Positions 4,926 to 62,683 of a stretch of 64,000 bases of DNA are shown here, one piece after another. Every line of letters starts with the position of its first letter. Positions within the stretch are counted from its first letter, which is position 1. Under the pieces are notes generated by a model that saw only the letters and a list, made by a program, of their open reading frames with translations, searched no databases and was not told the DNA's origin. The position numbers and the translations under genes were made by a program. The stretch lies in IMG/VR virus record IMGVR_UViG_3300013233_000093, positions 62,001-126,000 of that record, one strand, 5' to 3'.

Positions 4926-6527
4926 ATGGATAGTCGTGTGGTGGGTGAGTTGGAGTATGCTGAGTTGGTGTTGGATGGGGTGCTTAGTGGTCGTGTTATT
5001 AAGATCTATGAGGAGTCTGATAGTATTGCCGGTATGCTTTGCCTAGACAAAGACCGTGTGAAGTGGGTGTCTGGCGATAGCATCGCTGCAGACACTGTAG
5101 CAGGCATGCAGTTTATAGGACGTGCTTTTAAGGCTGTGTGGCGGCTCATAGTCCGTGCAGTCATGGCGGTAGTAAGTGGTCTTAAAAGACTCTGGGAGTG
5201 GCTTACCGGAGGCAAGGGCAGTACTAACCCTGATACTCCTGGTGCTACTTATCAGGATACACCTACTCCAGTAGGAGGTAAGATAGGTAAGCAAATGGCT
5301 CGTGAGGATAAGGCCGTCGTAGAGACTGCACTCATCGTAGCAGAGCTAGAAGAGAAGGGCGTAGATATAGAAAAGGCAGTAAGCGAAGTCACTCCTGAGA
5401 TGTTAGAAGCAGCACATCGCGAGAATAATACTCGGGACGAAGCACGGATATCTAAAATAGAGAAGGACGCGGAGGACGCTGAGGAGTTCAACAAGCGTGA
5501 GCGCGAAAGGTTAGACGGCATCACATCAAGGTTTAACGCAACCGCCAAGCAAGAAGCCGCTAATAAAAAGGAAGCCGAACGCATCGCAGCAGCAGATAAG
5601 GAGGTGAGGGAACGCGCAGCAGCAAGGGACGATGCAAGGATTAACGTATTGCGTAAACAACGCAGCGGGTTCACTCGTATAAAGATCACCAATGCCATAC
5701 GCGCCGCATACGCAGAAGAAGTTGGAAAAATCGAGAATAACGCAATCTTAACTTCCGGCGGCATAGACAAAGATAAAATGCGAAGAGCTGTGTATAAGGC
5801 GGCGTCAGGAAGCCAAAACATAAGCCGTATAGATCTAGCTGACTTGCGTTTTAATATTAAAGAAGTCGCTACAAACGGGCCGTCTACCGAGCGGACAAAG
5901 AGGGATGTTGGAGATGCATATAAACGCCTTATTGCTAAAGTTGTACTGCGTACAACCGAGAACGTGTACGAGATTTTTAATATGCCGGAGGGCTACGCGA
6001 GCGCGTTAATCGACGGCATGGTTGATGGCGTGGATGAAGATGAACTGGGCGGTGCGTTAGTATCACCCGACACCGGCGGGGGTAGAGTATTTACACTGAC
6101 CATGGGACGTACGGGCAAGCACACACCGAAGTTTACACTAGCCGTCACCTCACCCAGTACTCCGCCTACGTTGGAACACCTCGACATACCAGGCTTTAGC
6201 GCGGTCAGTGAGGAAATGCAGGAATATCACGAACATGTTTCCAAAACGTCTAAGGCATTCGAGCCGGCGCAAAAGCAAATCCTCGCTAAAATAAAGAAAG
6301 CGCTTAGAGTGCTGGACGAAGAAGCTTCTGCGTACAAGGATCATCCAGACGTGGAAAACATCCACTCCGTTATAGAATCCATAGGAAACGAGTATGCAAA
6401 CGTAACCAAGGCATTAAAGTTTGTAACGCATATCCTGAACGGTTACCAAGATGCGTACACATCCAGAGCCACATTGGCTAGGGAAATCGTGGGATTAGTA
6501 ATAAATAGCCCATCCCGGGAGAAGTAA
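4926..6527 (+). CDS. Inner-head/inner-body paralogue family protein with conserved leader (533 aa)
   Basis: Propeptide ending TVAGMQ, then amphipathic FIGRAFKAVWRLIV…LWEWLTGG helix as in the phiKZ gp93-type family; paralogous to 6622 and 29497. Confidence 0.7.
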   Translation: MDSRVVGELEYAELVLDGVLSGRVIKIYEESDSIAGMLCLDKDRVKWVSGDSIAADTVAGMQFIGRAFKAVWRLIVRAVMAVVSGLKRLWEWLTGGKGSTNPDTPGATYQDTPTPVGGKIGKQMAREDKAVVETALIVAELEEKGVDIEKAVSEVTPEMLEAAHRENNTRDEARISKIEKDAEDAEEFNKRERERLDGITSRFNATAKQEAANKKEAERIAAADKEVRERAAARDDARINVLRKQRSGFTRIKITNAIRAAYAEEVGKIENNAILTSGGIDKDKMRRAVYKAASGSQNISRIDLADLRFNIKEVATNGPSTERTKRDVGDAYKRLIAKVVLRTTENVYEIFNMPEGYASALIDGMVDGVDEDELGGALVSPDTGGGRVFTLTMGRTGKHTPKFTLAVTSPSTPPTLEHLDIPGFSAVSEEMQEYHEHVSKTSKAFEPAQKQILAKIKKALRVLDEEASAYKDHPDVENIHSVIESIGNEYANVTKALKFVTHILNGYQDAYTSRATLAREIVGLVINSPSREK

Positions 6528-6621: not shown

Positions 6622-8121
6622 ATGGATGTGTATGGTGAGTTGGAGTATGCTGAGTTGGTGTTGGATGGTGTGTTGAGTGGTAGGGTGAGTCAGATCTATG
6701 AGGAGTCTGATACTATTGCTGGTATGATGGGTATGTGTGGTGATAGAGTGGAGTGGGTGTCTGGCGACTCCATAGGCGCAGACACTGTAGCAGGCATGCA
6801 GTTTATAGGTAAGGCAATCGGGGCAGTTTGGAACTTGATCTGGAACGCCATTAGCGCAGTGCTGATAGCTATAGCTAAATTATTCATTTGGTTGTTTACA
6901 GGCGGCAGTCCTGGTAAATCGGGTATAGCGGGCACGATCTATGAAAAGAAGATCACGCCCGCAGGTGGCTGGTTTGGCAAGCGGCAGGTGAAAGAAGATT
7001 ACCATGCGTTACGCATGCGACGACTAGCCGAGCACTCAGTGGCCGTAAATAACCTTACAGCAAGTCTTATTGAACCGGGTAATGCGATAAAGAAGGAACT
7101 CGCTTCTGCGAATGAACTGATTAAACAGCTAGACAAGATTAAGAAAGATCAAGATGCTGACAATAAGACGCTTGACAAGATGACCGACGATATGAAAGCC
7201 TTGCTTAAAGCCCAGGCCGACGAAAAGAAAGATATAGTTTCAGGCAAGACGGTAGCTGTTAACACACCCGCGAAGTCTGATTTCTCAGCCACCATTAAGG
7301 TTACCGATGAGTTGCGCGAAGCGTTCAAGTCGGATTTCGAATACTTGGATAAACATGCAGTGGCCAATAAGGGCACTGTAAGACCAGAAGAAAACCGCAA
7401 GGTAATGCATGACCTCACAGGATTTTCAAAGAAGGCACTGACTGCCGCAGGGGCATTAAAGGACATTCCAAAAGACTTTGACCGCATTATAAAATCCATC
7501 GAGGCTAAGAAATTCGAGAGTGCCGGTAAAGATCAAAAGGCGTTGGTTGATAAGGTGTCTTCTGTGTCAACTGGCATTGCTAACGCAGTCGGACTTGACC
7601 TCGATAATGCAGGTGAGATAGCCCGGTACGCGGATAAACGTGGGGGTTTGTCAAGCACAGATCTAGGTGGCGGCAAGTTTGTGCGGGTGTCTAGCGAAGA
7701 AATAAAAGCCATTCCCGGTCTTTATACATTCAGCGTTAGTGTCATAGAACCCAAAGACATCATCAAAGTAAAACAGCTGATAATCGAAAAGGGCGACTTT
7801 GACGAAGATGTAATAAGCAAGCGTCATCAAGATATGGCGAAGGATTTAAAGATCCACGCAGATGGCTTTGAAGCAGTTAAAAAGCTCGTTAAGGAAACTA
7901 ACGATAAGCTGACCGCTTACACAAAGGGCATGGAAAAAGACGGAGACGTTCCGCTTAGCCCTCTTTTACGTGCAGTCGGTAATAACGTCAAGGAGTACGT
8001 TAACACATACCCTAAGTTATCCAAGGTACTTACTCAGATAACGACGGCAATGCAGCACGATGGAAACATTAAACTTGGTTTACTGTCCGCCATAGCGGCA
8101 GATGGTAAGAAGGATAAATAA
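6622..8121 (+). CDS. Inner-head paralogue family protein (499 aa)
   Basis: GELEYAELVLDGVLSGRV…DTVAGMQFIG leader shared with 4926 and 29497. Confidence 0.7.
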   Translation: MDVYGELEYAELVLDGVLSGRVSQIYEESDTIAGMMGMCGDRVEWVSGDSIGADTVAGMQFIGKAIGAVWNLIWNAISAVLIAIAKLFIWLFTGGSPGKSGIAGTIYEKKITPAGGWFGKRQVKEDYHALRMRRLAEHSVAVNNLTASLIEPGNAIKKELASANELIKQLDKIKKDQDADNKTLDKMTDDMKALLKAQADEKKDIVSGKTVAVNTPAKSDFSATIKVTDELREAFKSDFEYLDKHAVANKGTVRPEENRKVMHDLTGFSKKALTAAGALKDIPKDFDRIIKSIEAKKFESAGKDQKALVDKVSSVSTGIANAVGLDLDNAGEIARYADKRGGLSSTDLGGGKFVRVSSEEIKAIPGLYTFSVSVIEPKDIIKVKQLIIEKGDFDEDVISKRHQDMAKDLKIHADGFEAVKKLVKETNDKLTAYTKGMEKDGDVPLSPLLRAVGNNVKEYVNTYPKLSKVLTQITTAMQHDGNIKLGLLSAIAADGKKDK

Positions 8122-29496: not shown

Positions 29497-31053
29497 ATGG
29501 ATAGTAGTATGGTGAGTGAGTTGGAGTATGCTGAGTTGGTGTTGGATGGGGTGCTTAGTGGTCGGGTTATTAAGATCTATGAGGAGTCTGATAGTATAGC
29601 TGGTATGCTTTGCCTAGACAAAGACCGTGTGGAGTGGGTGTCTGGCGACTCCATAGGCGCAGACACCGTAGCTGGCATGCAGTTTATAGGTAGAGCTTTT
29701 AAGGCTGTATGGCGTCTGATAGTCCGTGCAGTGATGGCGGTAGTAAACGGCCTTAAAAGACTCTGGGAGTGGCTTACCGGAGGTAAGGGCAGCACTAATC
29801 CGGATACTCCTGGTAGTGTGTATGAAGAGAAGCCCACTCCTGTGGGAGGAGTCATAGGCAAGGAAATGGCTAAGGAAGACAAGGCTAACGTAGAGACCGC
29901 GCTCGCCGTAGCAGAGCTAGACGAGAAGGGAGTGGATATAGAAAAAGCGGCGGAAGAAGCGGCAAGACAAGACGCCGCCAAAGTTGAACGTCGTAAGGCT
30001 GAAGCTGCCGAGGAGGCCAGACGTCGTAAGGACGGGGCGCGTGCAGCGCGCGATAAACAGGAGGCTGAATCAAAAAGGATCAATGATGAACGTATGGCCA
30101 GGGAAGAAGAAGAGGCCAAAATAGCACTGAAGCGTCATCGCAAGGAAGCACTGGCCGCAGAACTAAAAAGGAAGGAAGAACTGCTGCAACGAGCTAGGAA
30201 ACTCGACGGGCTATCGTTCACTATTGAAATACCTGACACGATGAGAGTATTTAAACAGTCTGATATTGCCAGCATAGAGCGAGACGCCATTATAACGGAA
30301 AATCGCGTCGATTATGAAACCATGCGGTCATACTTAGCTAAGTCTACTGAAGCAATCATTGCAATGGGCGATGCCGGGCTGAAGTATTTGACGTTAGGCG
30401 TAGCCTCGTTGTATCGGGCATATCCACAAGACGGCGAGTTTACCGATAAGACACGCGATAGTATAAACAGTGCCATATCGAATGTAACCGATGGCTACGT
30501 AAAACATGCAGCCAACACACTGCGCGTATTATTGCATGGTCATGAAAAGACATACCGCACCAGCCTTGTGGTTGGCGAACGCATGACCGGAAACATGGGC
30601 GGGGGCGATGCGTATCTGGTAACGGTTAGCGCAACGCCTGTAGATGGACAGCTGTCCGTGACATCATCCCTTGTGCCAGCTAAGACAAGACCTGCGCTTA
30701 AATATGTAATGTTTAATGGCACCGAGCTGTCAAATAAAAATATGGTGGACTCGCATTACGAGACGAGGGTGTACGTCAGAGACTTAAATCAGGCCAGCGA
30801 GGCACAAGCTGAAGCACTCGCGGATGCCATCCGCGAGTTTAACGGTTACGTAAAGAAGTTAGACGGCAAGCCGGGTGCTGAGGTTATCACGGACGTTATT
30901 AAAAATGTGATATCGCTAGGAACCGTGGGTGGTACTGCAATAGGCAATGTCGTAAAGCGCCTGTCGAAGTATCAAGCAGCGACCGCAAACGAAGCTGTGT
31001 TCCGCAAAGACTTGTTTATAAACATATTAGACAACGAACCCATGCCCAAATAA
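29497..31053 (+). CDS. Inner-head paralogue family protein (518 aa)
   Basis: First ~150 aa highly similar to 4926; TVAGMQ followed by an amphipathic helix. Confidence 0.7.
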   Translation: MDSSMVSELEYAELVLDGVLSGRVIKIYEESDSIAGMLCLDKDRVEWVSGDSIGADTVAGMQFIGRAFKAVWRLIVRAVMAVVNGLKRLWEWLTGGKGSTNPDTPGSVYEEKPTPVGGVIGKEMAKEDKANVETALAVAELDEKGVDIEKAAEEAARQDAAKVERRKAEAAEEARRRKDGARAARDKQEAESKRINDERMAREEEEAKIALKRHRKEALAAELKRKEELLQRARKLDGLSFTIEIPDTMRVFKQSDIASIERDAIITENRVDYETMRSYLAKSTEAIIAMGDAGLKYLTLGVASLYRAYPQDGEFTDKTRDSINSAISNVTDGYVKHAANTLRVLLHGHEKTYRTSLVVGERMTGNMGGGDAYLVTVSATPVDGQLSVTSSLVPAKTRPALKYVMFNGTELSNKNMVDSHYETRVYVRDLNQASEAQAEALADAIREFNGYVKKLDGKPGAEVITDVIKNVISLGTVGGTAIGNVVKRLSKYQAATANEAVFRKDLFINILDNEPMPK

Positions 31054-36895: not shown

Positions 36896-36905
36896 AGAAT
36901 AAATT

Positions 36906-37725: not shown

Positions 37726-37760
37726 GCATAGACTACCTGCTCCTAGGAGCAGGTAGTCTA
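37726..37760. terminator. GCATA plus 32-bp perfect palindrome between convergent genes
   Basis: tagactacctgctcct|aggagcaggtagtcta. Confidence 0.75.
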
Positions 37761-37777
37761 CTAAGCTGTTTTTATTT

Positions 37778-40224: not shown

Positions 40225-41496
40225 ATGAACACCGTAGTCGCAGGTATGGAGAGGCTGAAGTACCAAAGTGGGTCTAAGCTGGCAGAAGAATTAGACGATT
40301 GTTTTGGGGCAATGCGCAGACAGAAACGCGTGGAACTTGATCACTTAAAAGATACTAAGATCGAAGACGTAATCAAGAAACACACTGGAATGAAAATCCG
40401 CTTTAGCGTGTCCAGTGAAGACGAGATTTACAGCTACCCCCCGTTCTTGGATAGGAACCACCCACTCTTACATCACTGGGGTAGAAACATCAGTACCAAC
40501 AGCGAGGCAGAAGAGGCACTGGGGACTAATCCAGTCATCGTAGGCAAGGTCGATTTCGAAAAGGGACGGGTCTCTGGTGTCTATAGCGAAATAGAATATC
40601 GCATTTTCTTACCAGGTGATTTTCTGTCACAGGGATCTCCACTGACCGCTGCACAAGTAACCGCGATTGTGCTACATGAACTGGGGCACGGCTTCCATGC
40701 GTTTGCATTGATGGGGTATACACTCACCACCAGCTTTGTTATTCAGCAAGCGGTGGCCGGACTGCTAAACGAGAAATCCACAGACCGTAAGTACGAAATC
40801 ATGATGGGAATGGAGAAACAGCCTGGGTTTAGAATCTCGGATAAAGACGCGTTGATGACATGTAAGACCAAGGAAGAAATCATCGCGGTGGTCATTACAG
40901 ACAGTGTCTTGGAAAATAAGAGTGAGTTTGGCGCCCCTGTGACTGATAGCCGCAGTCTGGAAATCATGGCCGATAAATACGTGTCGGTGCATGGCCGTGG
41001 TCGTGATCTAGCCACGGCCATCGATACGCTTGTAAACCGTGGCTTTAATTACGATAACGTATATAAGCCTATTCACTGGGTAATCAACCTTTATATCGCA
41101 CAGCGAGGCATTCTACTTACAACCCTAGTGATTTTATTCGTGGACGTAGCCTTCGTCATGTACTTTCTTCTGATAGCGCTGGTGCTTCGGGGACGGTGGA
41201 CGTCGGTCGGTGATTCAACCAAAGAACGATACGGAAACATCAAGAACGACATTGTCTTTTCACTGCGTAACGAAAAGGATAAAGACAGACGCGCTATGCT
41301 ATTAGCGGATTTGGACGCCGTGGACGAGCTGGAAAAGAAGACAAACGATAACCGCTTTTGGATAGGCGTTATGATGGATAATATTTTCCCGGCACTGCGT
41401 GGACGGACTAAGAGCAAGGACGTTCAGCGATCCGTCGAACGACTGATGCAAAACTCACTCTTTGAATCCAAAGAACGATTAGACCAACTGGTATAG
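40225..41496 (+). CDS. Virion/head protein with HExxH zinc-metallopeptidase motif and hydrophobic segment
   Basis: VLHELGH…EIMADKY (gluzincin-like); hydrophobic stretch GILLTTLVILFVDVAFVMYFLLIALVL; N-terminal AGME. Confidence 0.65.
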   Translation: MNTVVAGMERLKYQSGSKLAEELDDCFGAMRRQKRVELDHLKDTKIEDVIKKHTGMKIRFSVSSEDEIYSYPPFLDRNHPLLHHWGRNISTNSEAEEALGTNPVIVGKVDFEKGRVSGVYSEIEYRIFLPGDFLSQGSPLTAAQVTAIVLHELGHGFHAFALMGYTLTTSFVIQQAVAGLLNEKSTDRKYEIMMGMEKQPGFRISDKDALMTCKTKEEIIAVVITDSVLENKSEFGAPVTDSRSLEIMADKYVSVHGRGRDLATAIDTLVNRGFNYDNVYKPIHWVINLYIAQRGILLTTLVILFVDVAFVMYFLLIALVLRGRWTSVGDSTKERYGNIKNDIVFSLRNEKDKDRRAMLLADLDAVDELEKKTNDNRFWIGVMMDNIFPALRGRTKSKDVQRSVERLMQNSLFESKERLDQLV

Positions 41497-41505: not shown

Positions 41506-42318
41506 ATGCACAAGAGATTAGAAGAAATTGTTTTTGAGTACATCGACTCCGAAATGTCGTTTGGTTTAGAGCAAGAACAAGTCAGTAGAGATTTCCTAAT
41601 GGCATTGCTGGTGGCAAATCGCCTTACGGGCAGAAAGCCGCTGGTTATCCACAGCATGCTTAAACGTCAATGGTCGGACGTATTGTCACACCAAGCAGAA
41701 GAGATTTGTGACCTACTTTACGCCCGTCCTATCCGCTTTAATAAAGCACGCGTAATGACGTTCGTACACAGACACGTTATGTTAAAGGGTTTGGACGTAC
41801 GATGTTCTTACGGAGACGAGGGTTTAATCAGTAAGATGGTGCGTAATTTACATTGCGATGAAGGGGTTGACTTAATCGCAGATCACCCGGATGTTATTCC
41901 TGAGTTAGACAAGCAGTGCACAAAGCTCGAACAGTCGGATACAAGTGAGTTTAACGCAGCCATTGAACTCGCCGGAACCGATCCGCGCCAGTTGCACCTG
42001 TTTTACGGGTCATACCACCAAGCGGTTATAAACTCACCTGTTATGGCGGATCGCACAAAGGTGGCGCATCATGTATTTAACACCATCAATACAGAACTGC
42101 GCGCAGTGTGTAAAGAGAACGCCCGTATTTGCATGTTCATGTACGTGGACCACAATCAATTAGACATCGACTTAAGCGAGCATTCGATGTCCGAGTATGT
42201 ACACGGCATTACAGTAACCAGCCCATCTGTCGCACTAAGCGTCTTAGGGCACTGGACTGCCATGAGTAACCGTATTAAAGCTTTGGGAGATGAGAAATAT
42301 GCAATTACCGGACATTGA
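41506..42318 (+). CDS. Hypothetical protein, probably virion structural
   Basis: AGGAG SD; lies within the head-gene cluster. Confidence 0.6.
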   Translation: MHKRLEEIVFEYIDSEMSFGLEQEQVSRDFLMALLVANRLTGRKPLVIHSMLKRQWSDVLSHQAEEICDLLYARPIRFNKARVMTFVHRHVMLKGLDVRCSYGDEGLISKMVRNLHCDEGVDLIADHPDVIPELDKQCTKLEQSDTSEFNAAIELAGTDPRQLHLFYGSYHQAVINSPVMADRTKVAHHVFNTINTELRAVCKENARICMFMYVDHNQLDIDLSEHSMSEYVHGITVTSPSVALSVLGHWTAMSNRIKALGDEKYAITGH

Positions 42319-43555
42319 TCTAGACCAAGTAGAAGATCTTGAGATGGGCGATATCGACCTGCCTGAGATGGACGGGTTAAACGTAGCCCGGGTATTACTT
42401 GAGTCGATGACTTCCGTATCAGCCAATGGCATATCCAGAGACGTCGTCACGGGCATGCAATCGCTCGTACCGGGGCTGTTATCGGATTACCCCATCATGG
42501 GGTTTACAGAACAGCCAAGTACCATTAACCTTGTCCCAGGCATGCAGGCATTTCTAGCCAACGTAGCAGGACTTATATGGAAAGCCATTAAGGCCATTTG
42601 GAATATTCAACTGGCCGTCTTAAAGTGGATATGGAAGACAATCACTGCTGGTTTTTCTGGCAAGTCGCGTGACGCGGCTAGGCGTGTTAAAGCGGCTGTG
42701 GAAGACGTTAAGTCCGGCAAGAAGGTGTTTGACATTGAGGAGTACTATTCCAAGGGTACGCGCCTAAGTGAGTTCATCGAGGATGAGCACAAGTCACTGA
42801 TTGACCTAAATGACGCTTACCGTACATGGGGTATTTACGCAGCAATGAACGTCGCACTGGGCGAGGAACTCAAGTCCACGGACAGAGAGATCAAATCGCT
42901 TAGTGAAAAGACCGTGGCTAAGTCGGTCAATGCGTTCGTAGACAGATTCAAGGACGCCGCAGGCAAGGTAGTAAAAGAACATTCCATGTCTAAGGAGCTT
43001 GATCACTTTTACCCAGAGCTGGATAATGCGTATGATAGATACGAACTCATCGCTAAGAAAGAGTTTGTCGGTACCAGTTCTTCTAGCGACAACCCAGGTC
43101 CTGAGAACGGCGACGTTTTTTCCAGCAACAGTGCAACGTGGCGCGCTACACGCATCATTAAAACACGCAGGGAGGTTGCGTTAGGACTGCACAAATCCAA
43201 ACGTCGTTCCACAACAGGGGCACGCCCTAATAAAGATGCGATCATAGAAATCTTAGAATCGGATTTCTTTACTAAAGCGGTCGATCGTTCGATTACGAAA
43301 ACCATCGGTGCTAGCGTTCAAGCCACCGGCGCGTTTTTAAAGATGAACCCGTCGACTCCATCCACGGCGTCGTACAATGATAATGGAACTGCTGCAGCAG
43401 TTAAAGAGTTAACCGATGCGATGAATTCTGTTACAAAAGCGTATAACGTCATGTCCGGTAACTCTAAAGCGTTGTTCGACACCGCAAGGTTACTGAATAA
43501 CGCCAGAACAAAGATGAATATTGCATTCCATACGGCGTGCAAAGCACCCGCTTAA
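42290..43555 (+). CDS. Inner-head protein (paralogue superfamily)
   Basis: Acidic propeptide, GISR, FTEQPS…VPGMQA, then amphipathic LIWKAIKAIW…LKWIWK helix. Confidence 0.7.
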   Translation: MRNMQLPDIDLDQVEDLEMGDIDLPEMDGLNVARVLLESMTSVSANGISRDVVTGMQSLVPGLLSDYPIMGFTEQPSTINLVPGMQAFLANVAGLIWKAIKAIWNIQLAVLKWIWKTITAGFSGKSRDAARRVKAAVEDVKSGKKVFDIEEYYSKGTRLSEFIEDEHKSLIDLNDAYRTWGIYAAMNVALGEELKSTDREIKSLSEKTVAKSVNAFVDRFKDAAGKVVKEHSMSKELDHFYPELDNAYDRYELIAKKEFVGTSSSSDNPGPENGDVFSSNSATWRATRIIKTRREVALGLHKSKRRSTTGARPNKDAIIEILESDFFTKAVDRSITKTIGASVQATGAFLKMNPSTPSTASYNDNGTAAAVKELTDAMNSVTKAYNVMSGNSKALFDTARLLNNARTKMNIAFHTACKAPA

Positions 43556-47514: not shown

Positions 47515-47541
47515 TTTAGTAATCTCTTAAAGGTTTTTATA

Positions 47542-48615
47542 ATGTCCGAGAAAAAGGAACCAAGTCTGCTTAATCATATAAACGTCGTGCTAAGCAAGAT
47601 CGACGAGCTAGGCACGGACTCGTTATCCGAGGCCAGCAGCAGCACAAGACTTACACCAATGGTGCTTGTCGATCAGGCACTGACTCTGTCCGATGATAAG
47701 GTATTGACCAATGCATTGCAAACGTGCACAGGTATTTACACTGCACATTATCTACAGGCAGTGCAAGTCGCCAACGTAAAAGAGGTGCAGACACTGCACC
47801 TACTGGATCAGTTTGCCACCAACAGAGGCACTGCAAAGAGCGGTGTACTCATGGACGGCGCGTTTGACAAAATGTTATTGCCCATCGGCATGCAGTCTTA
47901 CGATAAGTCGGATAAGTTGCTGTCTTACGATAACGTCTATCCGGGTATGCAGGCCAAGGAAAGTCCCCTAGACGATCACGTCAACTTAGCGGTGGGTCGG
48001 GTAATCAACATTAAGTTGGGCGCCGGTGATACTAAGGTTGATATCCAATGCACCGTACAGATCAACCCAAGGGTCATTCCCTCATCGGTTCTGCCTAGCG
48101 TATTAGCCAATACCGTAAAAGATAAATCGTACATCGGTCGTTGGCATCAATGGCGCGCAGGTGAAATCGAATCGTTTATGGATTATGCGCTTGGCTTAGA
48201 CATCATCGAGCAAGAACGCACGGCAATGATGAATGATCCGTCAGGGTTATATATCGAATTGCGTAATCGCAAGAAAGAAGGTTGGTATCGCACACTGTTG
48301 TCTGGGCGTAAGTCTATGAACACAGCTTCTACCATGGCCGTCATTGCCAAGTCCACACAGGAAGAACTCGAACTTGCTCTCGGCGGTAAGCTCAAGAACG
48401 AGTCTATCATCCGCACGTACTTCGTAGAAACACATTCCATGCTGTTGATGGTGTTGGACATGCGTAAAGAACGGGTGTACTTGTGGCAACGAGGCATAGC
48501 GGGATCAGCCCGGTATACGTTTAGAGACCTCGAAAAGGTCTCTAAGAACTCAAACGGTATGGACATTGAGTCCGTAATGAAAGCGTACGCCCTCGGCGAC
48601 AGCGCACGATTCTAG
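47542..48615 (+). CDS. Head/inner-body protein (phiKZ gp89-like)
   Basis: SLSE…RLTP…VD, HYLQAV, NLAVGR and RWHQWRAGEI motifs; two GMQ sites. Confidence 0.72.
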   Translation: MSEKKEPSLLNHINVVLSKIDELGTDSLSEASSSTRLTPMVLVDQALTLSDDKVLTNALQTCTGIYTAHYLQAVQVANVKEVQTLHLLDQFATNRGTAKSGVLMDGAFDKMLLPIGMQSYDKSDKLLSYDNVYPGMQAKESPLDDHVNLAVGRVINIKLGAGDTKVDIQCTVQINPRVIPSSVLPSVLANTVKDKSYIGRWHQWRAGEIESFMDYALGLDIIEQERTAMMNDPSGLYIELRNRKKEGWYRTLLSGRKSMNTASTMAVIAKSTQEELELALGGKLKNESIIRTYFVETHSMLLMVLDMRKERVYLWQRGIAGSARYTFRDLEKVSKNSNGMDIESVMKAYALGDSARF

Positions 48616-50125: not shown

Positions 50126-51439
50126 ATGAACATGATCGCTCAAGATCTTGGTGCTGTAGCTTTTACCGAGTCAGACGAGGTTATCGCTGGTTTGCAATCC
50201 ATGGACTCCGAAGTTGAAATGGCAGAAGCCAATGCTTTGGAAGTTCAACATTCACGCATCGAAGCCGATATCGCTGCGGCGTCCAACGTCTGTGCCGGTC
50301 TGCAATCCTTGCATGACAGCGCTGCACGTGCAAGTGCACAAGGTGGATTAGACGGTAATGGCGGTGACGTACTGCTGGTCGCCGCAGAAGCATTGCTGGC
50401 TACCATCGGTGTCCAAAGCTCCACTGGCCTGCCTGGTATGCAAGCGTATAACAGCAACAGCAAAGGCGCTACTGTCGCGGGCATGCAGTCCTTCGGCGAA
50501 TGGATCAGCGGCATCTGGAATTCCATTGTGAAGGCTGTCAGTAAAGCCACGCAAGCAGTAGCCGCATGGTTTAAGAAATGGCTTGGCACAGTAGAAAGGC
50601 TCGAAAAGGCTGGAAAGAAATTGCGCTTGAATGCACATAACCGCGAAGACACTAAAGGTATTTTAGCTGAACCAACCTTCGAGGTGAGCAATTACTGGCT
50701 GCTAACTGAGAATGGCACGTCCGACGAGGTCAAGCCCGACGATTTCGCCGGTATGGTTGCAGAGGTAGAGGAATACTACGGCAGTGGATTGGTGGATGAT
50801 TTTGTTAAATCTATCGAGGAAACCATGGACGGCATTAAGAGCGATCCGGATAAAAGCGGCAGCCTGACCAGTAAAGACCTCGCGTACGTCAATAAGTTCA
50901 AAAAGATGTACAAAATCAAATCAACCACGGTGGATAGCGATGAGGGAGTTGAAGTGTCCACATCTCAGACGGCATTTAAAGGCGCCGAAGTCTTTGGCAA
51001 CGGTTTCTTCTACGCAATCGATGACAGTGAATCAAAAGGCTTTGACTTTACTGGTAGATTTCATGCTCCGGTTAAAAAGCAATTCGGCGGGGAAAGCAAA
51101 AAAGAAATCGACGCTTACGGTATTTCTGAAATAATATCAGTAGCCACTACAGTTGTAGATGCGTGCTCTTATATCAAAAGAAACGATCCTTTTAAAGATT
51201 TCGACGATGCAAACAAAGTCGTATTGAAAGCCGCCGAGGAAGCTGTCAAGGAAATTGAAAATGCGGAAAGATCTGCCGAAGGTGGTGAGTTTAAATCAAT
51301 TGCTTCTGATGTTACGGCAATGGTGGTTAGCGCCACCACAATGTTGCGCATGGTGAACCGTGACTACATCAAGCATGTCGTAAATGTTGCACAGAACCAG
51401 CACAGCTTCGCTGTCAAGTGTTACAAAAACATCAAATAA
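50126..51439 (+). CDS. Major internal head protein (phiKZ gp93-like family)
   Basis: Long acidic propeptide with five G-x-Q sites, GGLD motif, then amphipathic WISGIWNSIVKA…WFKKW helix. Confidence 0.78.
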   Translation: MNMIAQDLGAVAFTESDEVIAGLQSMDSEVEMAEANALEVQHSRIEADIAAASNVCAGLQSLHDSAARASAQGGLDGNGGDVLLVAAEALLATIGVQSSTGLPGMQAYNSNSKGATVAGMQSFGEWISGIWNSIVKAVSKATQAVAAWFKKWLGTVERLEKAGKKLRLNAHNREDTKGILAEPTFEVSNYWLLTENGTSDEVKPDDFAGMVAEVEEYYGSGLVDDFVKSIEETMDGIKSDPDKSGSLTSKDLAYVNKFKKMYKIKSTTVDSDEGVEVSTSQTAFKGAEVFGNGFFYAIDDSESKGFDFTGRFHAPVKKQFGGESKKEIDAYGISEIISVATTVVDACSYIKRNDPFKDFDDANKVVLKAAEEAVKEIENAERSAEGGEFKSIASDVTAMVVSATTMLRMVNRDYIKHVVNVAQNQHSFAVKCYKNIK

Positions 51440-51467
51440 GACTAAGGTCATATTTGAGCTACTACTG

Positions 51468-51506
51468 AATGGACAGCTGCTAACGCAGCTGTCTGTTTAT
51501 GCCGTC
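51468..51506. terminator. Hairpin followed by TATGCCG
   Basis: aatggacagctgc-taac-gcagctgtctgtt-tatgccg. Confidence 0.65.
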
Positions 51507-51546
51507 TACTATGTTTTGTATACAACTAAAGTATTAGGATTTTACC

Positions 51547-53097
51547 ATGCCCTTTGTAACGTTGATAGTGCCACAGCACGAAATAACCGTGGGGAGACCC
51601 ATCGCCAATGAGATCATGGAAGACGTTAGGACTGCAATGGGACTTTCATCTGACATGGAGATACAGTTAGCAGATAAGCTTGAAGGTAAACCGCGTCCAG
51701 GCACCACACTCACAGACTCAAACAACGAAGTGGAAAACAGCGCCGCTGTAAAGGCGAATATAATCAGAGCCACTGTAAAAGAGACGTACACAGAAGACGG
51801 CATTATGACTTCTGTGGTGTATCGCCCTGGTCATAAAGCATTGTTTATAGACAGCGCAATAGGCCTTTATATCAAGCCTGTCTATGGCACTACGATGTTG
51901 GAGTTCGACATTACGATAAACTTTCGTAATAGAAGCGATCTGATGGCCTTACGCAGACGTTTACGATTATCTGGTGGATTGCCACAGGCACACGTTAAAC
52001 ACGCCGTACGGTACAACTACGGGCTTCCTGACACGGTAGCGTTATTCCTACATACCACGTGGACACTCAGAGAGAACATGGGCGGGTACGGAGAGACGTT
52101 ACAAGAGTATCTAGATAACCATTTCATCCAGGGACGTATTACAAGATCGTCTATGGACGGCAAGACCAATCGCCTTGCGATAGATGAAATACAAACAGGC
52201 ATCTTTGGTTTATATGGAGATGAAGTCTATTACAATGAAGTGGAGGCCAGTGATAACGTCTTTCAAATGACGTTAACGTATAAAGTACAGTACGAGCAAA
52301 TACTGGGACTGACAATGCAGTATCCGAAAGTCATCCATAACCAGCCTATACCGGCGTACTACGACGAGTGGTGGCAACCTAAGGAAGTCGTGAGTTCCAT
52401 GCCCAGTATGCCAGTTGGCTATCCGTTACCCAAGACCATGCCGCTGATACTAGGACAGACTCCAGAGGGTGGTGGTATACGCATAGATCCCACAGATGAA
52501 TGGTTTCCCACGAACGTCCCGTACAACACACGCTCCATACTGTTCACGCCTTTGTACATTGAACCCGGGAACGAAAATGCGTTGTTTCATATAGACGATT
52601 TTACAGACGCGGAGTTACCGCCCATTGTTAAGTTTTATCTAGAGACGTTTCCAACCCAGATAACAGAACTGGGATCTGGATTACCGTACTACATCCAGGC
52701 GTTTAGAGTGAATGAAATCGAAGAAGAGATTACACTATCCATATCGGACACAGGACATGTCACATCCGTGATACCAATGGATGTTCGAAGACGTAACTAT
52801 CTCCGTGTCAGCATGATGGTGGATTTATCCAGCATTTCTATGGAGCACTCGCTTTACTTATGTAAAAACCCAAACATAGCAGAAGGTGTGTTTAACTTAA
52901 ACTACGGTGAGGTATTCTTAAACACAGATGGATGGCTGACCACCACTCCGGATAAAAGTCAGATCTTACCCACAGAGTTTAAGAAGTCAGTACAGCGTAT
53001 GCCGACCACACACTCCAGATACAAAGAGTCTTCTCGTTATAGAGAACATGCAGTCCAATACGGCAGTGTAACCGTCCACGCCCAACTACCGAGGTAA
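51547..53097 (+). CDS. Virion structural protein (neck/tail-terminator region)
   Basis: TVGRP, LFID…YIKPVY, YPKVIHNQ and RRNYLR motifs; synteny with the phiKZ gp98-101 block. Confidence 0.65.
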   Translation: MPFVTLIVPQHEITVGRPIANEIMEDVRTAMGLSSDMEIQLADKLEGKPRPGTTLTDSNNEVENSAAVKANIIRATVKETYTEDGIMTSVVYRPGHKALFIDSAIGLYIKPVYGTTMLEFDITINFRNRSDLMALRRRLRLSGGLPQAHVKHAVRYNYGLPDTVALFLHTTWTLRENMGGYGETLQEYLDNHFIQGRITRSSMDGKTNRLAIDEIQTGIFGLYGDEVYYNEVEASDNVFQMTLTYKVQYEQILGLTMQYPKVIHNQPIPAYYDEWWQPKEVVSSMPSMPVGYPLPKTMPLILGQTPEGGGIRIDPTDEWFPTNVPYNTRSILFTPLYIEPGNENALFHIDDFTDAELPPIVKFYLETFPTQITELGSGLPYYIQAFRVNEIEEEITLSISDTGHVTSVIPMDVRRRNYLRVSMMVDLSSISMEHSLYLCKNPNIAEGVFNLNYGEVFLNTDGWLTTTPDKSQILPTEFKKSVQRMPTTHSRYKESSRYREHAVQYGSVTVHAQLPR

Positions 53098-54334: not shown

Positions 54335-55127
54335 GAGTAGTAACTTGAACAAGCAAGAATTAGCGAAACACATCTTTAGACACACTTACCGTTGTGAATG
54401 CACCACTCTGGCGTACGAGTCTATTACAGACGTCGTCCGTATCCAGCGCAAGACCATGAACACCACCGTATTTGATCCTTACGGACAGCGCATCGTCATT
54501 ACAGAAGACCCGTCTGAAATAGAGGCTTCGGTAGCAGCGACATTTAGCCGTGTTTCTAATTACTCTGGCGATGAGGCGGCGGATGCGTTAGCGGCAAAAT
54601 CGCTAATGACATACGACCTGACTATCAACCAGATGATCGAGATGAACGTGGACAACGGTTACGACGTAACATTGCTGGATCTGTCGTCTGCAGAAGAGTT
54701 GATTGGTGTGGTCGCAGACTACATTAACATCGTCCAGGAAGACGTAACCTTATCCGCCCATGGTGCTGGTGTGCCGGATAAAGACATCCGTGCGCTTAAC
54801 GAGTTCTACACCAAGGTACTGCCCTTAAGAAACATGATTGGCAGTGCACGGGGCAGCAGTGATATGTGGGACGCACTGTCTGGCATCTTTGCTACAATCG
54901 GGTTTACCTTAAACGAGTCGAACAATGAGTTGGAATCACTGGCATCCCGCTGGGCAGAACCGGTTCCCACATTCGAAGAAGCACGTTTACTGGTACACGA
55001 AGAAGCAGTTAAACCCTCCATCCGCCCGACGTCACAACGAGGCTGGGGCGGCAACGGCCTGAACACGGGTAAAACACACGACGAGACGATTCGTAGAAGT
55101 GATTCGAATCCGTACGACTTCGGATGA
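54321..55127 (+). CDS. Conserved hypothetical protein in the structural cluster
   Basis: Overlaps both neighbours; LTINQMIE motif. Confidence 0.65.
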   Translation: MKSNRSSNLNKQELAKHIFRHTYRCECTTLAYESITDVVRIQRKTMNTTVFDPYGQRIVITEDPSEIEASVAATFSRVSNYSGDEAADALAAKSLMTYDLTINQMIEMNVDNGYDVTLLDLSSAEELIGVVADYINIVQEDVTLSAHGAGVPDKDIRALNEFYTKVLPLRNMIGSARGSSDMWDALSGIFATIGFTLNESNNELESLASRWAEPVPTFEEARLLVHEEAVKPSIRPTSQRGWGGNGLNTGKTHDETIRRSDSNPYDFG

Positions 55128-56479
55128 GTGTTCTTAACTCCGCTACGTACGAGGAGATGTTGGAGCTGGTAAAGCGTCCTTCGTATCCAGTGCGTTGGAA
55201 GTATTCCTGTGTGGTGATAACCGACGGCGTGCGTAACGATGTAATCAACTTAAACATCTATCAAGTAAAGAACGATTTCGTAAACGAGTATTACGGATAC
55301 CACTTCTTAACGGTAACGGTAGATGCGGTGGTGCATCGTCGTATGTTGAATAACCTGACTTCTCTGCAGGTGGAACTCACACAGACTCAGGATGAAACGG
55401 CAAGTGTGCCGCAGACAGGTAAGGTAAAGAGCCAACTGTTTAACGCCAAGTTGACAGACCCAACCAATCCTGAGTTGATGTCTATACAGAAGGGCGGGTC
55501 AAGAGACGATCAGCAATCCCAGTTACTGGGACACGCGGAAATCACGTTACAGCTCATCGAACCCTTCATGTCGGACTATCGCGTGATGGAGATAGGTGGT
55601 GTGGTGCGTGACGAGACCGTACAGGACGTCCTAACGGTCTTACTCGGTAGAGGCTTGCCTAAGGTAGCCTCTGCAGATCTCCTCTCTGATCCGTCTTATA
55701 TGGGCTTACGTGGTGTGCATGTGGTAAAGCCAGATAATACGATCGTGCATAAGCAGCTTATCCTAGAGACAGGCACACGCCTGATAGACTTGCCTAGGTT
55801 GTTGCAAGACACTGTAGGTGTGTATACTTCTGGTTTAGGATGGCATGTGCACCGTGGCAGGTGTTATGTGTTTCCTAAGTTGCGATACGACTTGTTTCAG
55901 GAAGACACACGCACACTGACGATTCTTAATGTGCCGGAAGCAGAGATCCCCACCATGGAGAAAACCTTCTTGGTGCGGTCAGGACAGTTGTTTGTTTTCT
56001 CTACAGGAGAAACAGGCCATGCTGATTTGTCTGAGGAAGCCATTGCTAATGTCGGTAACGGACTTAGATTTATTAAGTCCACGGACCTGGTAAACGGGTA
56101 CCATGTAAACACCGAGAACAAAACCAGCTTTACGCGCACCGACTATGTACGAGAGTACTTAATAGACGAACGTGCGCAAGGAGACAATAACGTAAAGTCC
56201 GCTAAGCCGTTCTTCACCGACAACCCGTTTAACGAGTTATCTGAGATGACGGAAGGGCTGGGTTCTAGGCTCCGTGTAAACTGGGATCATGCAGAACCCA
56301 ATCTGCTATACCCGGGCATGCAGGTGCGGTACATGTACGTACATAACGATGAAGTAATCCAGATGTACGGAAGTCTAATCGGACTGCATACGTTCGCAGC
56401 ACCCACTACGGATCGTGTATTGGATAATCAATATACGACATCCTGTTCACTAACCATTCACGTTAAACGTAAGGCATAA
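55124..56479 (+). CDS. Baseplate hub-like virion protein (phiKZ gp101-like)
   Basis: PDN, LQ…GVYTSGLG, YVFP, GNGLRF and LLYPGM motifs. Confidence 0.65.
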   Translation: MSVLNSATYEEMLELVKRPSYPVRWKYSCVVITDGVRNDVINLNIYQVKNDFVNEYYGYHFLTVTVDAVVHRRMLNNLTSLQVELTQTQDETASVPQTGKVKSQLFNAKLTDPTNPELMSIQKGGSRDDQQSQLLGHAEITLQLIEPFMSDYRVMEIGGVVRDETVQDVLTVLLGRGLPKVASADLLSDPSYMGLRGVHVVKPDNTIVHKQLILETGTRLIDLPRLLQDTVGVYTSGLGWHVHRGRCYVFPKLRYDLFQEDTRTLTILNVPEAEIPTMEKTFLVRSGQLFVFSTGETGHADLSEEAIANVGNGLRFIKSTDLVNGYHVNTENKTSFTRTDYVREYLIDERAQGDNNVKSAKPFFTDNPFNELSEMTEGLGSRLRVNWDHAEPNLLYPGMQVRYMYVHNDEVIQMYGSLIGLHTFAAPTTDRVLDNQYTTSCSLTIHVKRKA

Positions 56480-60334: not shown

Positions 60335-60499
60335 TATTATGTTACAGACATGCATTATAGTGCATGACTTACAATTTTAGCCATTCGTCCATATCCCTAT
60401 TGGCGTGTGGCACCGCATTAGGTGCGGATCGTTTCGCTAGCGCTAGCGACTTTTAGTTCGGCCACGACGATAGCCGAACGTAACTTAAAGGTAATAATA

Positions 60500-62683
60500 A
60501 TGTCAAGACTTGACTCTACAATCAGTTACGATGCAGCAGCAGACTGCATTTTAACCATCGACCAGACCCTGCGCGCCAAGGAAGATATCTATGGCGAAGA
60601 TTTGGCTGCATCCGTAGCTGGCATGCAGTCCCTGGGTAACGCTGACTTCGCTGACGTGAAAGCCACTCATGACGCCACCACCGACATTTTGAACGTCGCT
60701 GGTTTGCAACAGTTGCTTGTTGATGAGTACGGTGCTGATAATAAAGAAGCCATCCGTATCGGTATGGAAGCAGCCAGCATTCAAATGATGGTTTCTGGCG
60801 GCATGGAAATGGCCACCAACACCCCTGACGATTTGCCTAACCTTGAAAAGGGTACCGTGGTACTGGCAGCAAGCGATGTGGTTCCTGGTTTGCAAGCATT
60901 CCAAAACCAAGATCTTGGTGAATACCGCGCTACTGCCATTGTGATGGCAGGTTTGACAGCTGCTTCTGGTAAAGCCGATGAGCTGTTCTATCCAACCAAA
61001 GTTGTGGAAGCCGGTGCACAGGGACGTAGCGTTTCAGTTCGTATCCCTTACGTGTACAAACGTACCCTGAAATCCACCGACGGTTCCCCAATGGAAATCG
61101 CCATGACCCCTCTGATGGGCGCCATGGAAGATCACACCATTTTGGAAGCAGACATCCTGAAACTTCTGCCTAATGCAGACAACACCGCTAACTCAGCTTA
61201 CTTGGTTGATCCAGCAGTGGTTCCAAATGAAACCATCGTTGTAGATGGCATTGACGTCAACACACGTCCCATCGTTTTCGGTAAGAAGACCGATCTGATT
61301 TCTTTGTCTGGACACACCGGATTGCTTGGTTCTGCAGCACAGTCTGAAACCGACACCATGTCTACCTTGGTAAACTTGGGTCACGTCTGGGCTAAGATCA
61401 GTACCAGTACCACAGACGCAGCAGGCGCCACTGTGGTAAAATCCAGCATTGTTAAGTTCCGCGTAGACGGCACACCTGGCTCTACCTTTACTCGTCCTAG
61501 CGAAGGCAAAGACACCGACCTGTCCATGCTGTACACCGAATCATTGATGCTGGGTGGCGAAGTCACTGGTATCGACGGCGTTACAATTACAACTGCAGGT
61601 CTTGGTATCGACGGCTTGATCGCTGCCGGCGGCAAAGCTTGGACCATTCAGTTGCCTGTCCGTATTTCAGGTTCTTGCAACTTTGAAACCTCCAACATCA
61701 TCGTTGACGGCACCGCTATTGATCTTGGTAAAGTGTTCATCGGTGATACCGAAGTGGCACAGTCCAGTGCTGAATACACCGCACTGAAAGCAGCTATGAC
61801 TTTGGAATTGATCGGCTATCGTCCGTTGGCTACTCGTACCAACAGCACTTTGCGTCAAACCGGTACTCTGATCGACATGGGCACTGCGCGTAACTACTTC
61901 TTTGAAGTGCGTCCTGGTTCTCCTGTTGCTACCCGTAAACCTTCTGGTCCTTACGTCGGTGGTGGTGCAAACTTGGATTACATGAAGAAAGCGCTGCGTA
62001 CACGCACCTCTAACTCCACTGTGACCAACATCCTTGCACAAGAACAAGCGATCATCTACGCAGCAGCCAACAGCGCTCCTGTCGGTGGATCCACCACCAT
62101 CGGTGGAATGTATGTGCGTCCTACCTATTTGGTAGACAACATTGACGCTGCACTGAACGTCGTCTTCCAAAACTCCATCGCCATTGTCGAGAACTTGCGT
62201 TCTGTGATGTACAATGCAATGGGCGTGATGGCTGACACCATGGCCATCAGTTCTGGTTACATCACTGCACTGGGCGAGTTCCCACAGGGCGAGCAAGAGT
62301 ATGACATCATCGCCATCTGCGATCCTCGTCTGGCTCCTTTGTTCATGCGCTCCGGTGACGAACGTACTCTGGGTGCAAACAACAACTTGATCGTCGCATC
62401 GCATTTGGACAAGCGCATGCGCGGTAAAGTATTGTTTTCATTCTCACGTCGTAAACGTGCAGGCGATTCCCAGATTGATCCATTGAGCTGGGGTGCTCGT
62501 TACGTTAAGCCACCTATCGTGCATACCGCGAAAGGCATTGTGCGTAACGATGCGATCTTAGATGAGATCCATGTATTGCCACAAGAGCATCACATCAACG
62601 TGTTGCCTATCCTGGGACGTATCAACGTCACCAACTTAGAGACTGTGTACAAACACATCTCTAAAACTACTGCACCTGCTTAA
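60500..62683 (+). CDS. Major capsid protein precursor (phiKZ gp120-like)
   Basis: ~727 aa; ELFYPT…V, TRP, LIGY…TNSTLRQTG, DP…LF.R.GD.RTLG and LPILGRI motifs; propeptide with G-x-Q sites; strongly biased codon usage. Confidence 0.92.
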   Translation: MSRLDSTISYDAAADCILTIDQTLRAKEDIYGEDLAASVAGMQSLGNADFADVKATHDATTDILNVAGLQQLLVDEYGADNKEAIRIGMEAASIQMMVSGGMEMATNTPDDLPNLEKGTVVLAASDVVPGLQAFQNQDLGEYRATAIVMAGLTAASGKADELFYPTKVVEAGAQGRSVSVRIPYVYKRTLKSTDGSPMEIAMTPLMGAMEDHTILEADILKLLPNADNTANSAYLVDPAVVPNETIVVDGIDVNTRPIVFGKKTDLISLSGHTGLLGSAAQSETDTMSTLVNLGHVWAKISTSTTDAAGATVVKSSIVKFRVDGTPGSTFTRPSEGKDTDLSMLYTESLMLGGEVTGIDGVTITTAGLGIDGLIAAGGKAWTIQLPVRISGSCNFETSNIIVDGTAIDLGKVFIGDTEVAQSSAEYTALKAAMTLELIGYRPLATRTNSTLRQTGTLIDMGTARNYFFEVRPGSPVATRKPSGPYVGGGANLDYMKKALRTRTSNSTVTNILAQEQAIIYAAANSAPVGGSTTIGGMYVRPTYLVDNIDAALNVVFQNSIAIVENLRSVMYNAMGVMADTMAISSGYITALGEFPQGEQEYDIIAICDPRLAPLFMRSGDERTLGANNNLIVASHLDKRMRGKVLFSFSRRKRAGDSQIDPLSWGARYVKPPIVHTAKGIVRNDAILDEIHVLPQEHHINVLPILGRINVTNLETVYKHISKTTAPA

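What the first reader, a model, noticed from the sequence alone, without database searches (positions are those of the whole stretch)
50126..50500. Head-maturation motif appears switched from Glu to Gln (G-[ML]-Q) across head proteins
Seen: propeptide regions repeatedly carry G-x-Q. Examples: 50126 (AGLQS twice, IGVQS, PGMQA, AGMQS), major capsid (AGMQS, AGLQQ, PGLQA), 4926/6622/29497 (VAGMQF), 42290 (TGMQS, PGMQA), 47542 (IGMQS, PGMQA). A few G-M-E forms remain (40225 AGME; capsid IGME, GGME). Known: phiKZ gp175 and T4 gp21-type prohead proteases cleave after Glu (S/A/G-x-E in phiKZ), with the last site just before the mature domain, which is where these Q motifs lie. Inference: this phage has a Gln-preferring prohead protease and its substrates co-evolved. 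The protease gene is outside the window.
Basis: partly seen in the sequence, partly recalled or inferred. Interest (0 to 1): 0.72.

Follow-up and report, generated by a model that had tools for sequence, protein, structure and literature searches.

The report
Gln-cutting prohead protease with co-evolved substrates
In this uncultured phiKZ-like giant phage, the head-maturation cleavage sites that end in glutamate in all characterised relatives end in glutamine instead, in the protease's own tail and in its substrates, so the enzyme and about a dozen targets appear to have changed specificity together.

Summary
The window lies in a 222.9-kb phiKZ-like phage from a microbial mat.

- **Enrichment.** G-M-Q occurs 17 times against 3.7 expected (0 of 1000 shuffles). 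All 17 are in head or virion-type proteins, nearly all in N-terminal propeptides, in the context V-x-G-[ML]-Q|[SAF].
- **Protease.** The Peptidase_S80 (gp175-type) gene lies 46 kb upstream of the window. Its two C-terminal self-cleavage motifs end in Glu in about 95% of 154 homologues. Here both are VGMQ|S.
- **Capsid site.** Capsid PGLQ|A aligns exactly with the verified phiKZ E163 and SPN3US E130 maturation sites.
- **Replication.** A second uncultured phage (G001) shows the same switch. The nearest relative (G002) uses A-M-E. Twelve of 14 orthologous P1 positions read Q (G001: M at one) against E in G002.
- **Background.** Such columns make up 0.64% of core-protein columns where G002 has Glu.
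- **Other lineages.** Two more S80 lineages have Gln or Leu at both self-cleavage sites.
- **Pocket candidate.** Gly186 is invariant in 146 Glu-type enzymes, Ala here and Asp in G001. It is the only residue that separates the types.

No biochemical proof exists. This is a new variant of a known kind.

The parts
50126..51439 (+). Internal head protein (phiKZ_IP family), 437 aa. The propeptide of about 121 aa is followed by an amphipathic helix.
   Evidence: PF12699 E 4e-22; phrog_2497 internal head protein
50189..50197 (+). G-L-Q24|S predicted cleavage motif. It has no aligned counterpart in the orthologues.
50297..50305 (+). G-L-Q60|S predicted cleavage motif. Orthologues: G001 IGMQ|S, G002 TAME|S.
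50408..50416 (+). G-V-Q97|S, a weaker candidate motif with no conserved counterpart.
50435..50443 (+). G-M-Q106|A predicted cleavage motif. Orthologues: G001 PGMQ|S, G002 ASME|D.
50480..50488 (+). G-M-Q121|S, the predicted final maturation site of the internal head protein. Orthologues: G001 AGMQ|G, G002 HAME|S.
60500..62683 (+). Major capsid protein (PhiKZ_MCP). The likely start is ATG 60500 (727 aa); the GTG at 60422 opens the longest ORF.
   Evidence: PF25620 E 5e-118; phrog_3231; start inferred from the orthologue alignment and the database gene call P0152
60620..60628 (+). Capsid G-M-Q43|S (Q69 counted from the GTG start). Aligned residues: G001 AGMQ|A; Glu-type VAME|S, LGLE|S, VGFE|S, LSME|S.
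60701..60709 (+). Capsid G-L-Q70|Q. Orthologues: G001 CGLQ|S, G002 AGME|A.
60887..60895 (+). Capsid G-L-Q132|A (Q158 counted from GTG), the predicted maturation site. It aligns with phiKZ-type GLE163|N and SPN3US-type ATE130|Y.
   Evidence: PMC11297242; PMC10052503
60761..60808 (+). Capsid propeptide motifs IGME90|A and GGME103|M, retained Glu forms. E90 is Glu in all three related genomes.
42290..43555 (+). Head protein (421 aa) with G-M-Q57|S (42452-42460) and G-M-Q86|A (42539-42547), followed by an amphipathic helix. Orthologues: G001 VGLQ|G and HGMQ|G; G002 IAME|S and YAME|N.
47542..48615 (+). Head protein (phrog_3239; orthologue of KTN4_116, 'putative structural head protein') with G-M-Q118|S (47887-47895) and G-M-Q137|A (47944-47952). 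G001 has EGTQ|G at the first site.
4926..6527 (+). Internal-head-protein-like paralogue with VAGMQ62|FIG (5103-5111) and an upstream IAGML|C.
6622..8121 (+). Internal-head-protein-like paralogue with VAGMQ60|FIG (6793-6801) and an upstream IAGMM|G.
29497..31053 (+). Internal-head-protein-like paralogue with VAGMQ62|FIG (29674-29682) and an upstream IAGML|C.
40225..41496 (+). Head protein with a conserved HExxH motif. Its N-terminal site is VAGME9|R (40243-40251), the one orthologous site that keeps Glu here. Orthologues: G001 VGLQ|A, G002 FAME|A.
56315..56323 (+). G-M-Q400 inside ORF 55124-56479. It is conserved as GMQ in G001 and also in Glu-type G002, so it is a structural element and not a cleavage site.

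Best explanation
The phage's prohead serine protease has changed its P1 preference from Glu to Gln. The enzyme is a 260-aa member of MEROPS/Pfam S80, the phiKZ gp175 / SPN3US gp245 type, encoded at G000 15341-16123, 46 kb upstream of the window.

Its predicted recognition motif is [V/I/A]-x-G-[M/L]-Q, with cleavage before S, A, G or F. During prohead maturation it is predicted to do four things:
- remove its own disordered C-terminal tail at VGMQ199|S and VGMQ229|S;
- remove the capsid propeptide at PGLQ132|A (Q158 counted from the GTG start);
- trim the portal candidate at YGMQ186|S and VGTQ243|S;
- cut the propeptides of internal head proteins into small pieces. ORF 50126 has three sites with aligned orthologous counterparts and two candidates without one.

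The substrates changed in step with the enzyme. At orthologous P1 positions this phage and a second uncultured phage (G001) carry Gln where every Glu-type relative carries Glu.

Shown here: the motif enrichment, the homology-anchored E-to-Q replacement, the intact catalytic triad and the fold. Inferred: that cleavage really occurs after Gln, and that Gly186->Ala (Asp in G001), in the loop after catalytic Asp180, contributes to the altered S1 pocket.
For: - **Enzyme identity.** PF20034 E 3.9e-49 and phrog_3014. H79, S154 and D180 are invariant across 112 homologues; they correspond by position to SPN3US gp245 H77/S153/D178 (PMC5694885). The AF2 model has pLDDT above 90 for residues 21-190 and a disordered tail from about 199 to 260. 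The best PDB fold match is T4 gp21, 5JBL, probability 1.0.
- **Self-cleavage sites.** At site 1, P1 is Glu in 146 of 154 aligned S80 proteins. At site 2 it is Glu in 148 of 154. This phage has Gln at both. The positions (199 and 229) match the SPN3US AQE-203 autocleavage site and its ATE-234 motif (PMC5694885).
- **Capsid.** PGLQ|A aligns column for column with phiKZ-type GLE163|N and SPN3US-type ATE130|Y, both verified experimentally (PMC11297242, PMC10052503).
- **Replication in G001.** This 204-kb genome has 39% capsid identity to ours. GMQ occurs 15 times against 3.7 expected, and Gln sits at the same orthologous sites.
- **Control in G002.** In the nearest relative, the same unbiased tripeptide scan returns AME (27 against 8.9) and MES (24 against 8.9).
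- **Orthologous sites.** Twelve of 14 orthologous sites read Q here (G001: Q at 11, M at one) against E in G002. Among 1398 core-protein columns where G002 has Glu, only 9 (0.64%) are Gln in both other genomes, and 5 of those 9 are the motif sites.
- **Pocket candidate.** Gly186 is Gly in 146 of 146 Glu-type enzymes, including G002. It is Ala here and Asp in G001.
Against: - No proteomic or biochemical data exist for this uncultured phage.
- One orthologous site keeps Glu here (VAGME9|R in ORF 40225), and two G-M-E motifs remain in the capsid propeptide. Met or Leu sit at some equivalent positions: GLM|S in the G001 protease, and IAGMM|G and IAGML|C in the paralogues. The pocket may therefore be broadly neutral rather than strictly Gln-specific.
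- The two other non-Glu lineages (P0079, P0019) keep Gly186, so that residue cannot be the general determinant.
- Propeptide alignments are of low identity. They are anchored mainly by the motif and by the flanking conserved segments.
- Structure-based docking gave no verdict.
Confidence: 0.8

Rival explanations
1. The protease has a relaxed specificity. It accepts Glu and Gln (and Met or Leu) about equally at P1, and the excess of Gln reflects drift or another selective pressure on the propeptides rather than a true preference.
For: Glu is retained at VAGME9|R in ORF 40225 and in capsid IGME and GGME. Met is at P1 of the second G001 self-cleavage site, and GMM and GML motifs occur in the paralogues. 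A promiscuous intermediate is logically required to move a dozen sites.
Against: Twelve of 14 orthologous sites are Gln in this genome and 11 of them are also Gln in the 38-40% identical G001, against a background of 0.64%. G[ML]E is not enriched here (22 against 27.9), and GME is below expectation in G001 (4 against 8.5). Drift under an indifferent enzyme would leave a mixture of E and Q.
Confidence: 0.13
2. The protease is still Glu-specific. The G-M-Q elements are uncleaved docking or targeting motifs, and maturation uses the remaining Glu motifs, for example capsid GGME103|M.
For: G-M-E motifs exist 29-42 residues upstream of the expected capsid maturation site. An A-L-E is present in the propeptide of ORF 50126.
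Against: The protease tail after residue 199 has no [SAG]-x-E motif at all, while both conserved self-cleavage positions are Gln. The verified phiKZ and SPN3US capsid sites align with Gln. The final site before the conserved amphipathic helix of the internal head proteins is Gln here and Glu in G002.
Confidence: 0.04
3. A different enzyme, for example the HExxH head protein at window 40225-41496, cleaves the G-M-Q sites.
For: A conserved HExxH motif sits in a head-module protein.
Against: That protein and its HExxH motif are equally conserved in the Glu-type phages phiKZ/KTN4, Yong XC31 and G002, so it does not track the switch. The S80 protease's own self-cleavage motifs do track it.
Confidence: 0.02
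4. The pattern is a chance or compositional artefact, inflated by paralogue copies.
For: Five of the 17 GMQ lie in near-identical paralogue N-termini.
Against: Thirteen independent occurrences remain against 3.7 expected. No shuffle reached the observed count. An independent genome replicates the pattern. Glu-type controls are negative.
Confidence: 0.01

Closest known systems
phiKZ gp175 / 201phi2-1 / SPN3US gp245 prohead proteases (MEROPS S80, Pfam PF20034)
   Same: Same family (E 4e-49) and the same His-Ser-Asp triad. The same 260-aa layout, with a disordered C-terminal tail carrying two self-cleavage motifs at equivalent positions. The same substrate set: capsid, portal and internal head or ejection proteins. 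The same small residue at P3 and Ser-rich P1'.
   Different: P1 is Gln instead of Glu at the homologous sites. P3 is restricted to Gly and P2 to Met or Leu. The otherwise invariant Gly186 is Ala.
T4 gp21 (MEROPS S77, PDB 5JBL)
   Same: Best structural match to the predicted protease fold. Also a prohead protease that processes capsid and core proteins and then itself.
   Different: T4 cleaves after Glu in L/I-x-E. There is no sequence-level match (PF03420 absent; no PDB HMM hit).
Herpesvirus assemblin (MEROPS S21)
   Same: Distantly related fold (weak Foldseek hits) and the same role in capsid maturation, with self-release.
   Different: It has a Ser-His-His triad and Ala|Ser specificity, and it belongs to eukaryotic viruses.
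Picornavirus 3C and coronavirus main proteases
   Same: A functional analogy only: viral maturation proteases that require Gln at P1 with a small P1' residue.
   Different: They have an unrelated chymotrypsin-like fold and a Cys nucleophile. No homology is claimed.

Membership tests
Peptidase S80 (phiKZ gp175 family) | Significant match to the family profile | tested here: met
   PF20034 at 167 bits against a cut-off of 23.4, E 3.9e-49; phrog_3014 head maturation protease, E 7e-51
Peptidase S80 (phiKZ gp175 family) | Catalytic His-Ser-Asp triad | tested here: met
   H79, S154 and D180 are invariant in 112-154 aligned homologues and match SPN3US H77/S153/D178 by position (PMC5694885)
Peptidase S80 (phiKZ gp175 family) | gp21/assemblin-like fold | tested here: met
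   AF2 model with pLDDT above 90 over residues 21-190; the top three Foldseek hits are T4 gp21 5JBL chains, probability 1.0
Peptidase S80 (phiKZ gp175 family) | C-terminal tail removed by self-cleavage at family motif sites | tested here: inconclusive
   Both conserved motif positions are present in a disordered tail. Cleavage itself cannot be observed with these tools.
Peptidase S80 (phiKZ gp175 family) | Cleavage C-terminal to Glu ([S/A/G]-x-E), as in all characterised members | tested here: not met
   Gln occupies P1 at both self-cleavage positions and at the capsid position aligned with the verified phiKZ E163 and SPN3US E130 sites. This is a sequence inference, and it is the variant feature.
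phiKZ_IP internal head proteins (PF12699), for ORF 50126-51439 | Family profile match, plus an N-terminal propeptide with several protease motifs ahead of the mature domain | tested here: met
   PF12699 at 79 bits against a cut-off of 27. Five G-x-Q motifs lie in residues 22-121, and three align to A/S-M-E in G002.
PhiKZ_MCP (PF25620), for ORF 60500-62683 | Family profile match, with a long N-terminal propeptide ending at the protease site | tested here: met
   PF25620 E 5e-118 covering residues 147-744 of the GTG-start ORF. The site aligns with verified sites.

The most novel reading that the evidence does not exclude
P1 specificity in S80 prohead proteases is evolutionarily labile. It has left Glu at least three times (Gln here and in G001, Gln in P0079, Leu in P0019). 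Inside one small clade it either arose twice or reverted, because the best 52-protein tree pairs this Gln-type phage with Glu-type G002.

The driver could be escape from host immune sensors that are tripped by Glu-specific phage proteases. CBASS CD-NTase activation loops are cleaved by T4 gp21 and become blind to it when their Glu residues are changed to Gln (PMC12991175). That would make this a natural case of a whole protease-substrate network being recoded to evade a tripwire.
Probability: 0.15. Interest if true: 0.85.

Novelty: new variant of a known kind. Interest (0 to 1): 0.64.

Why it matters
All characterised prohead proteases of the T4 and phiKZ lineages cut after Glu, and annotators use that rule to predict mature virion proteins.

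A natural Glu-to-Gln switch that carried about a dozen orthologous sites in at least six protein families with it is a clean natural experiment in protease-substrate co-evolution. It offers a testable specificity determinant (Gly186) in a protease family with no solved structure. It also warns that motif-based prediction of mature giant-phage proteins must be calibrated for each lineage.

Bacterial CBASS sensors are now reported to detect phage protease activity through Glu-containing loops (PMC12991175). A recoded specificity is therefore also a candidate counter-defence strategy.

Tried and rejected
**Searches that found nothing useful**
- Megablast of the locus against known phages found nothing.
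- PF03420 (T4-type S77) is absent from the genome.
- Word-based protein searches with the protease, the capsid protein and a three-member profile returned no new close clade member.
- The search for related loci with the window's own protease found no relative.
- A profile search of PDB sequences gave only noise, so no residue-level map to T4 gp21 was possible.
- The Thomas & Black 2013 gp175 mutagenesis paper is not held.

**Structure-based attempts**
- Complex prediction of the protease domain with its own tail peptide returned no verdict (score 0.02). It counts neither for nor against.
- Model coordinates are not exposed, so the S1 pocket could not be inspected directly.

**Pocket candidates rejected**
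- Candidate residues N42, H106, P132, F153 and P185 from the first comparison failed the stricter test in which both Gln-type enzymes must differ from Glu-type G002 and G002 must carry the Glu-type majority residue; G002 departs from that majority itself at 42 and 106.
- Positions 102 and 171 were rejected because the G001 residue at 102 and the shared Arg at 171 are common in Glu-type enzymes.

**Limits of what was tested**
- A formal head versus non-head enrichment test with an independent virion gene list was not done. Only the location of hits in proteins with head or virion homology was recorded.
- Monophyly of the two Gln-type phages is not supported by the best tree, but it is not rejected either (AU p 0.053).

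Full report
**What the window is.** The window is bases 62001-126000 of a 222,906-bp virus record with direct terminal repeats. About 42% of sampled words from window 50126-53097 were recovered from a microbial-mat metagenome run. The phage is phiKZ-like. Its capsid protein matches PhiKZ_MCP (PF25620, E 5e-118) but is at most 30% identical to any deposited phage. Gene order around the finding mirrors the phiKZ head module. ORF 50126-51439 is a phiKZ_IP internal head protein (PF12699).

**Checking the observation.**
- On 247 heuristically called ORFs of the whole genome, GMQ occurs 17 times against 3.7 expected. It is the third most enriched of 8000 tripeptides.
- No within-protein shuffle out of 1000 reached the observed count. 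G[ML]Q[SAGF] gave 20 against 3.4. G[ML]E is not enriched.
- Five GMQ are copies in near-identical paralogue N-termini, which leaves 13 independent occurrences.
- Positions that were not used for selection also show structure: Val at P5, Ala/Pro/Val at P4, Ser/Ala at P1' and Leu/Ile/Phe at P2'.
- All 17 GMQ lie in the protease, capsid protein, portal candidate, internal head protein, internal-head-protein-like paralogues, or orthologues of phiKZ structural proteins.
- One of them (LYPGMQV, window 56315-56323) is equally conserved in a Glu-type relative, so it is not a site.

**Finding the protease.** The gene is at G000 15341-16123, 46 kb upstream of the window.
- It matches Peptidase_S80 with E 3.9e-49 and phrog_3014.
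- His79, Ser154 and Asp180 are invariant among homologues. They correspond to SPN3US gp245 H77/S153/D178 (PMC5694885).
- An AlphaFold2 model is confident for residues 21-190 and disordered from about 199 to 260. Its best PDB matches are T4 gp21 chains.
- An exhaustive HMMER search gave 657 relatives. I aligned the best 150 plus four named phages.
- The family has two conserved motifs in the C-terminal tail, P-[SAG]-[LM]-E|S and G-[ML]-E|S. Glu is at P1 in 146 and 148 of 154 sequences respectively.
- SPN3US gp245 is known to cut itself at AQE-203 and has a further motif at ATE-234 (PMC5694885). This phage has VGMQ199|S and VGMQ229|S at those positions.

**Anchoring on verified substrate sites.** The phiKZ capsid protein is cut between Glu163 and Asn164 (PMC11297242). 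SPN3US gp75 is cut at ATE-130 (PMC10052503). In a seven-sequence alignment these Glu residues share a column with Gln of PGLQ|A here, Gln of AGTQ|A in G001, and Glu in three other relatives. An upstream capsid site behaves the same way.

**Replication and control.** The protease search exposed three other proteases with non-Glu P1. One of them, P0004, sits on a 204-kb DTR contig, G001, which I retrieved in full. G001 has 39% capsid identity to this phage and again shows GMQ at 15 against 3.7 expected, clustered in head-protein N-termini. The closest protease relative, P0003, is Glu-type and lies on G002, 197.5 kb. The same unbiased scan there returns AME (27 against 8.9) and MES. Cultured Glu-type phages show no GMQ excess.

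**Site-by-site co-evolution.** Reciprocal-best orthologues were aligned.
- At 12 of 14 orthologous motif positions, this phage has Gln, G001 has Gln (Met once) and G002 has Glu. The positions are protease x2, capsid x3, portal candidate x2, ORF 42290 x2 and internal head protein x3.
- The exceptions are ORF 40225 (E here, Q in G001, E in G002) and a capsid Glu kept by all three.
- In 22,439 gap-free columns of 52 core proteins, only 9 of 1398 columns with Glu in G002 are Gln in both other genomes. Five of those nine are the motif sites.
- The portal assignment rests on orthology to KTN4_164 and on 'portal' annotations among weaker hits. Its predicted sites (Q186, Q243) resemble SPN3US portal sites at 161 and 254 (PMC10052503).

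**Evolutionary history.** The protease tree places this phage, G001 and G002 in one clade (SH-aLRT 95). P0079 (Gln) and P0019 (Leu) fall elsewhere, so there were at least three departures from Glu. A 52-protein tree favours (this phage, G002) with G001 outside (90.5/85). The AU test does not reject the alternatives (p 0.053 and 0.133). One switch followed by a reversion, two parallel switches, or a single switch all remain possible.

**Mechanism.** Glu-to-Gln needs one G-to-C change per codon. Moving a dozen sites implies a tolerant intermediate enzyme. The retained Glu site and the Met or Leu at some equivalent positions suggest that some tolerance persists.

Only one protease position is invariant in Glu-type enzymes, including G002, and changed in both Gln-type enzymes: Gly186, which is Ala here and Asp in G001. 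It lies six residues after catalytic Asp180, in a confidently modelled loop. From memory, the equivalent loop of herpesvirus proteases forms the oxyanion hole next to P1. This link is an inference and was not tested. P0079 and P0019 keep Gly186, so other routes to a changed specificity exist.

**Comparison with the known.** The enzyme is a member of S80 by profile, triad and fold. It departs in the one functional trait shared by all characterised members, Glu at P1. Four literature searches found only Glu-specific cases. A 2026 preprint shows that CBASS sensors are activated when T4 gp21 cuts Glu-containing loops, and that Glu-to-Gln loop variants escape detection (PMC12991175). That offers a speculative selective reason for the switch.

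**Verdict.** Biochemical confirmation is outstanding. I rate it a new variant of a known kind.

Noticed in passing
window 40225-41496: This head-module protein (phrog_2767, orthologue of KTN4_111) carries an HExxH motif that is conserved in G001, G002, Yong XC31 and phiKZ-type KTN4. It may be a zinc-metalloprotease-like head protein. Pfam gives no hit.
   Followed up: partly
window 4926-6527, 6622-8121, 29497-31053; also G000 36765-38366(-), 199554-201002(-), 201043-202251(-), 208793-210022(-): A dispersed paralogue family. Three members compared have N-terminal ~110 residues about 90% identical, while the family alignment diverges downstream. The shared cleavage-site-plus-amphipathic-helix module matches the internal head protein family (hhalign probability 87%). 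Five members also carry IAGMM|G or IAGML|C upstream of VAGMQ|F.
   Followed up: partly
P0079 (L010:640-1422) and P0019 (L011:10001-10783): Two further, unrelated S80 protease lineages have non-Glu residues at both self-cleavage positions: TMQ|S and SMQ|S in P0079, GLL|S and GML|S in P0019. Their contigs are too short to test substrates.
   Followed up: partly
window 60422-60500 and 47419-47542: The longest ORFs overcall two starts. Orthologue alignments and the database gene call place the capsid start at ATG 60500 (727 aa) and the head-protein start at ATG 47542 (357 aa).
   Followed up: yes
G002 (L033-L042), whole genome: The Glu-type sister phage uses a narrow A-M-E|S motif (AME 27 against 8.9 expected), so P3 differs between the sister lineages as well (Ala against Gly).
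   Followed up: partly
window 46432-47514 (-), 53105-54334 (+), 57787-59358 (-): Context genes: a tail tube protein (PF23971), a head-tail joining protein (PF24214/PF24215) and a divergent DnaB-like helicase (PF20307). None carries the motif.
   Followed up: no
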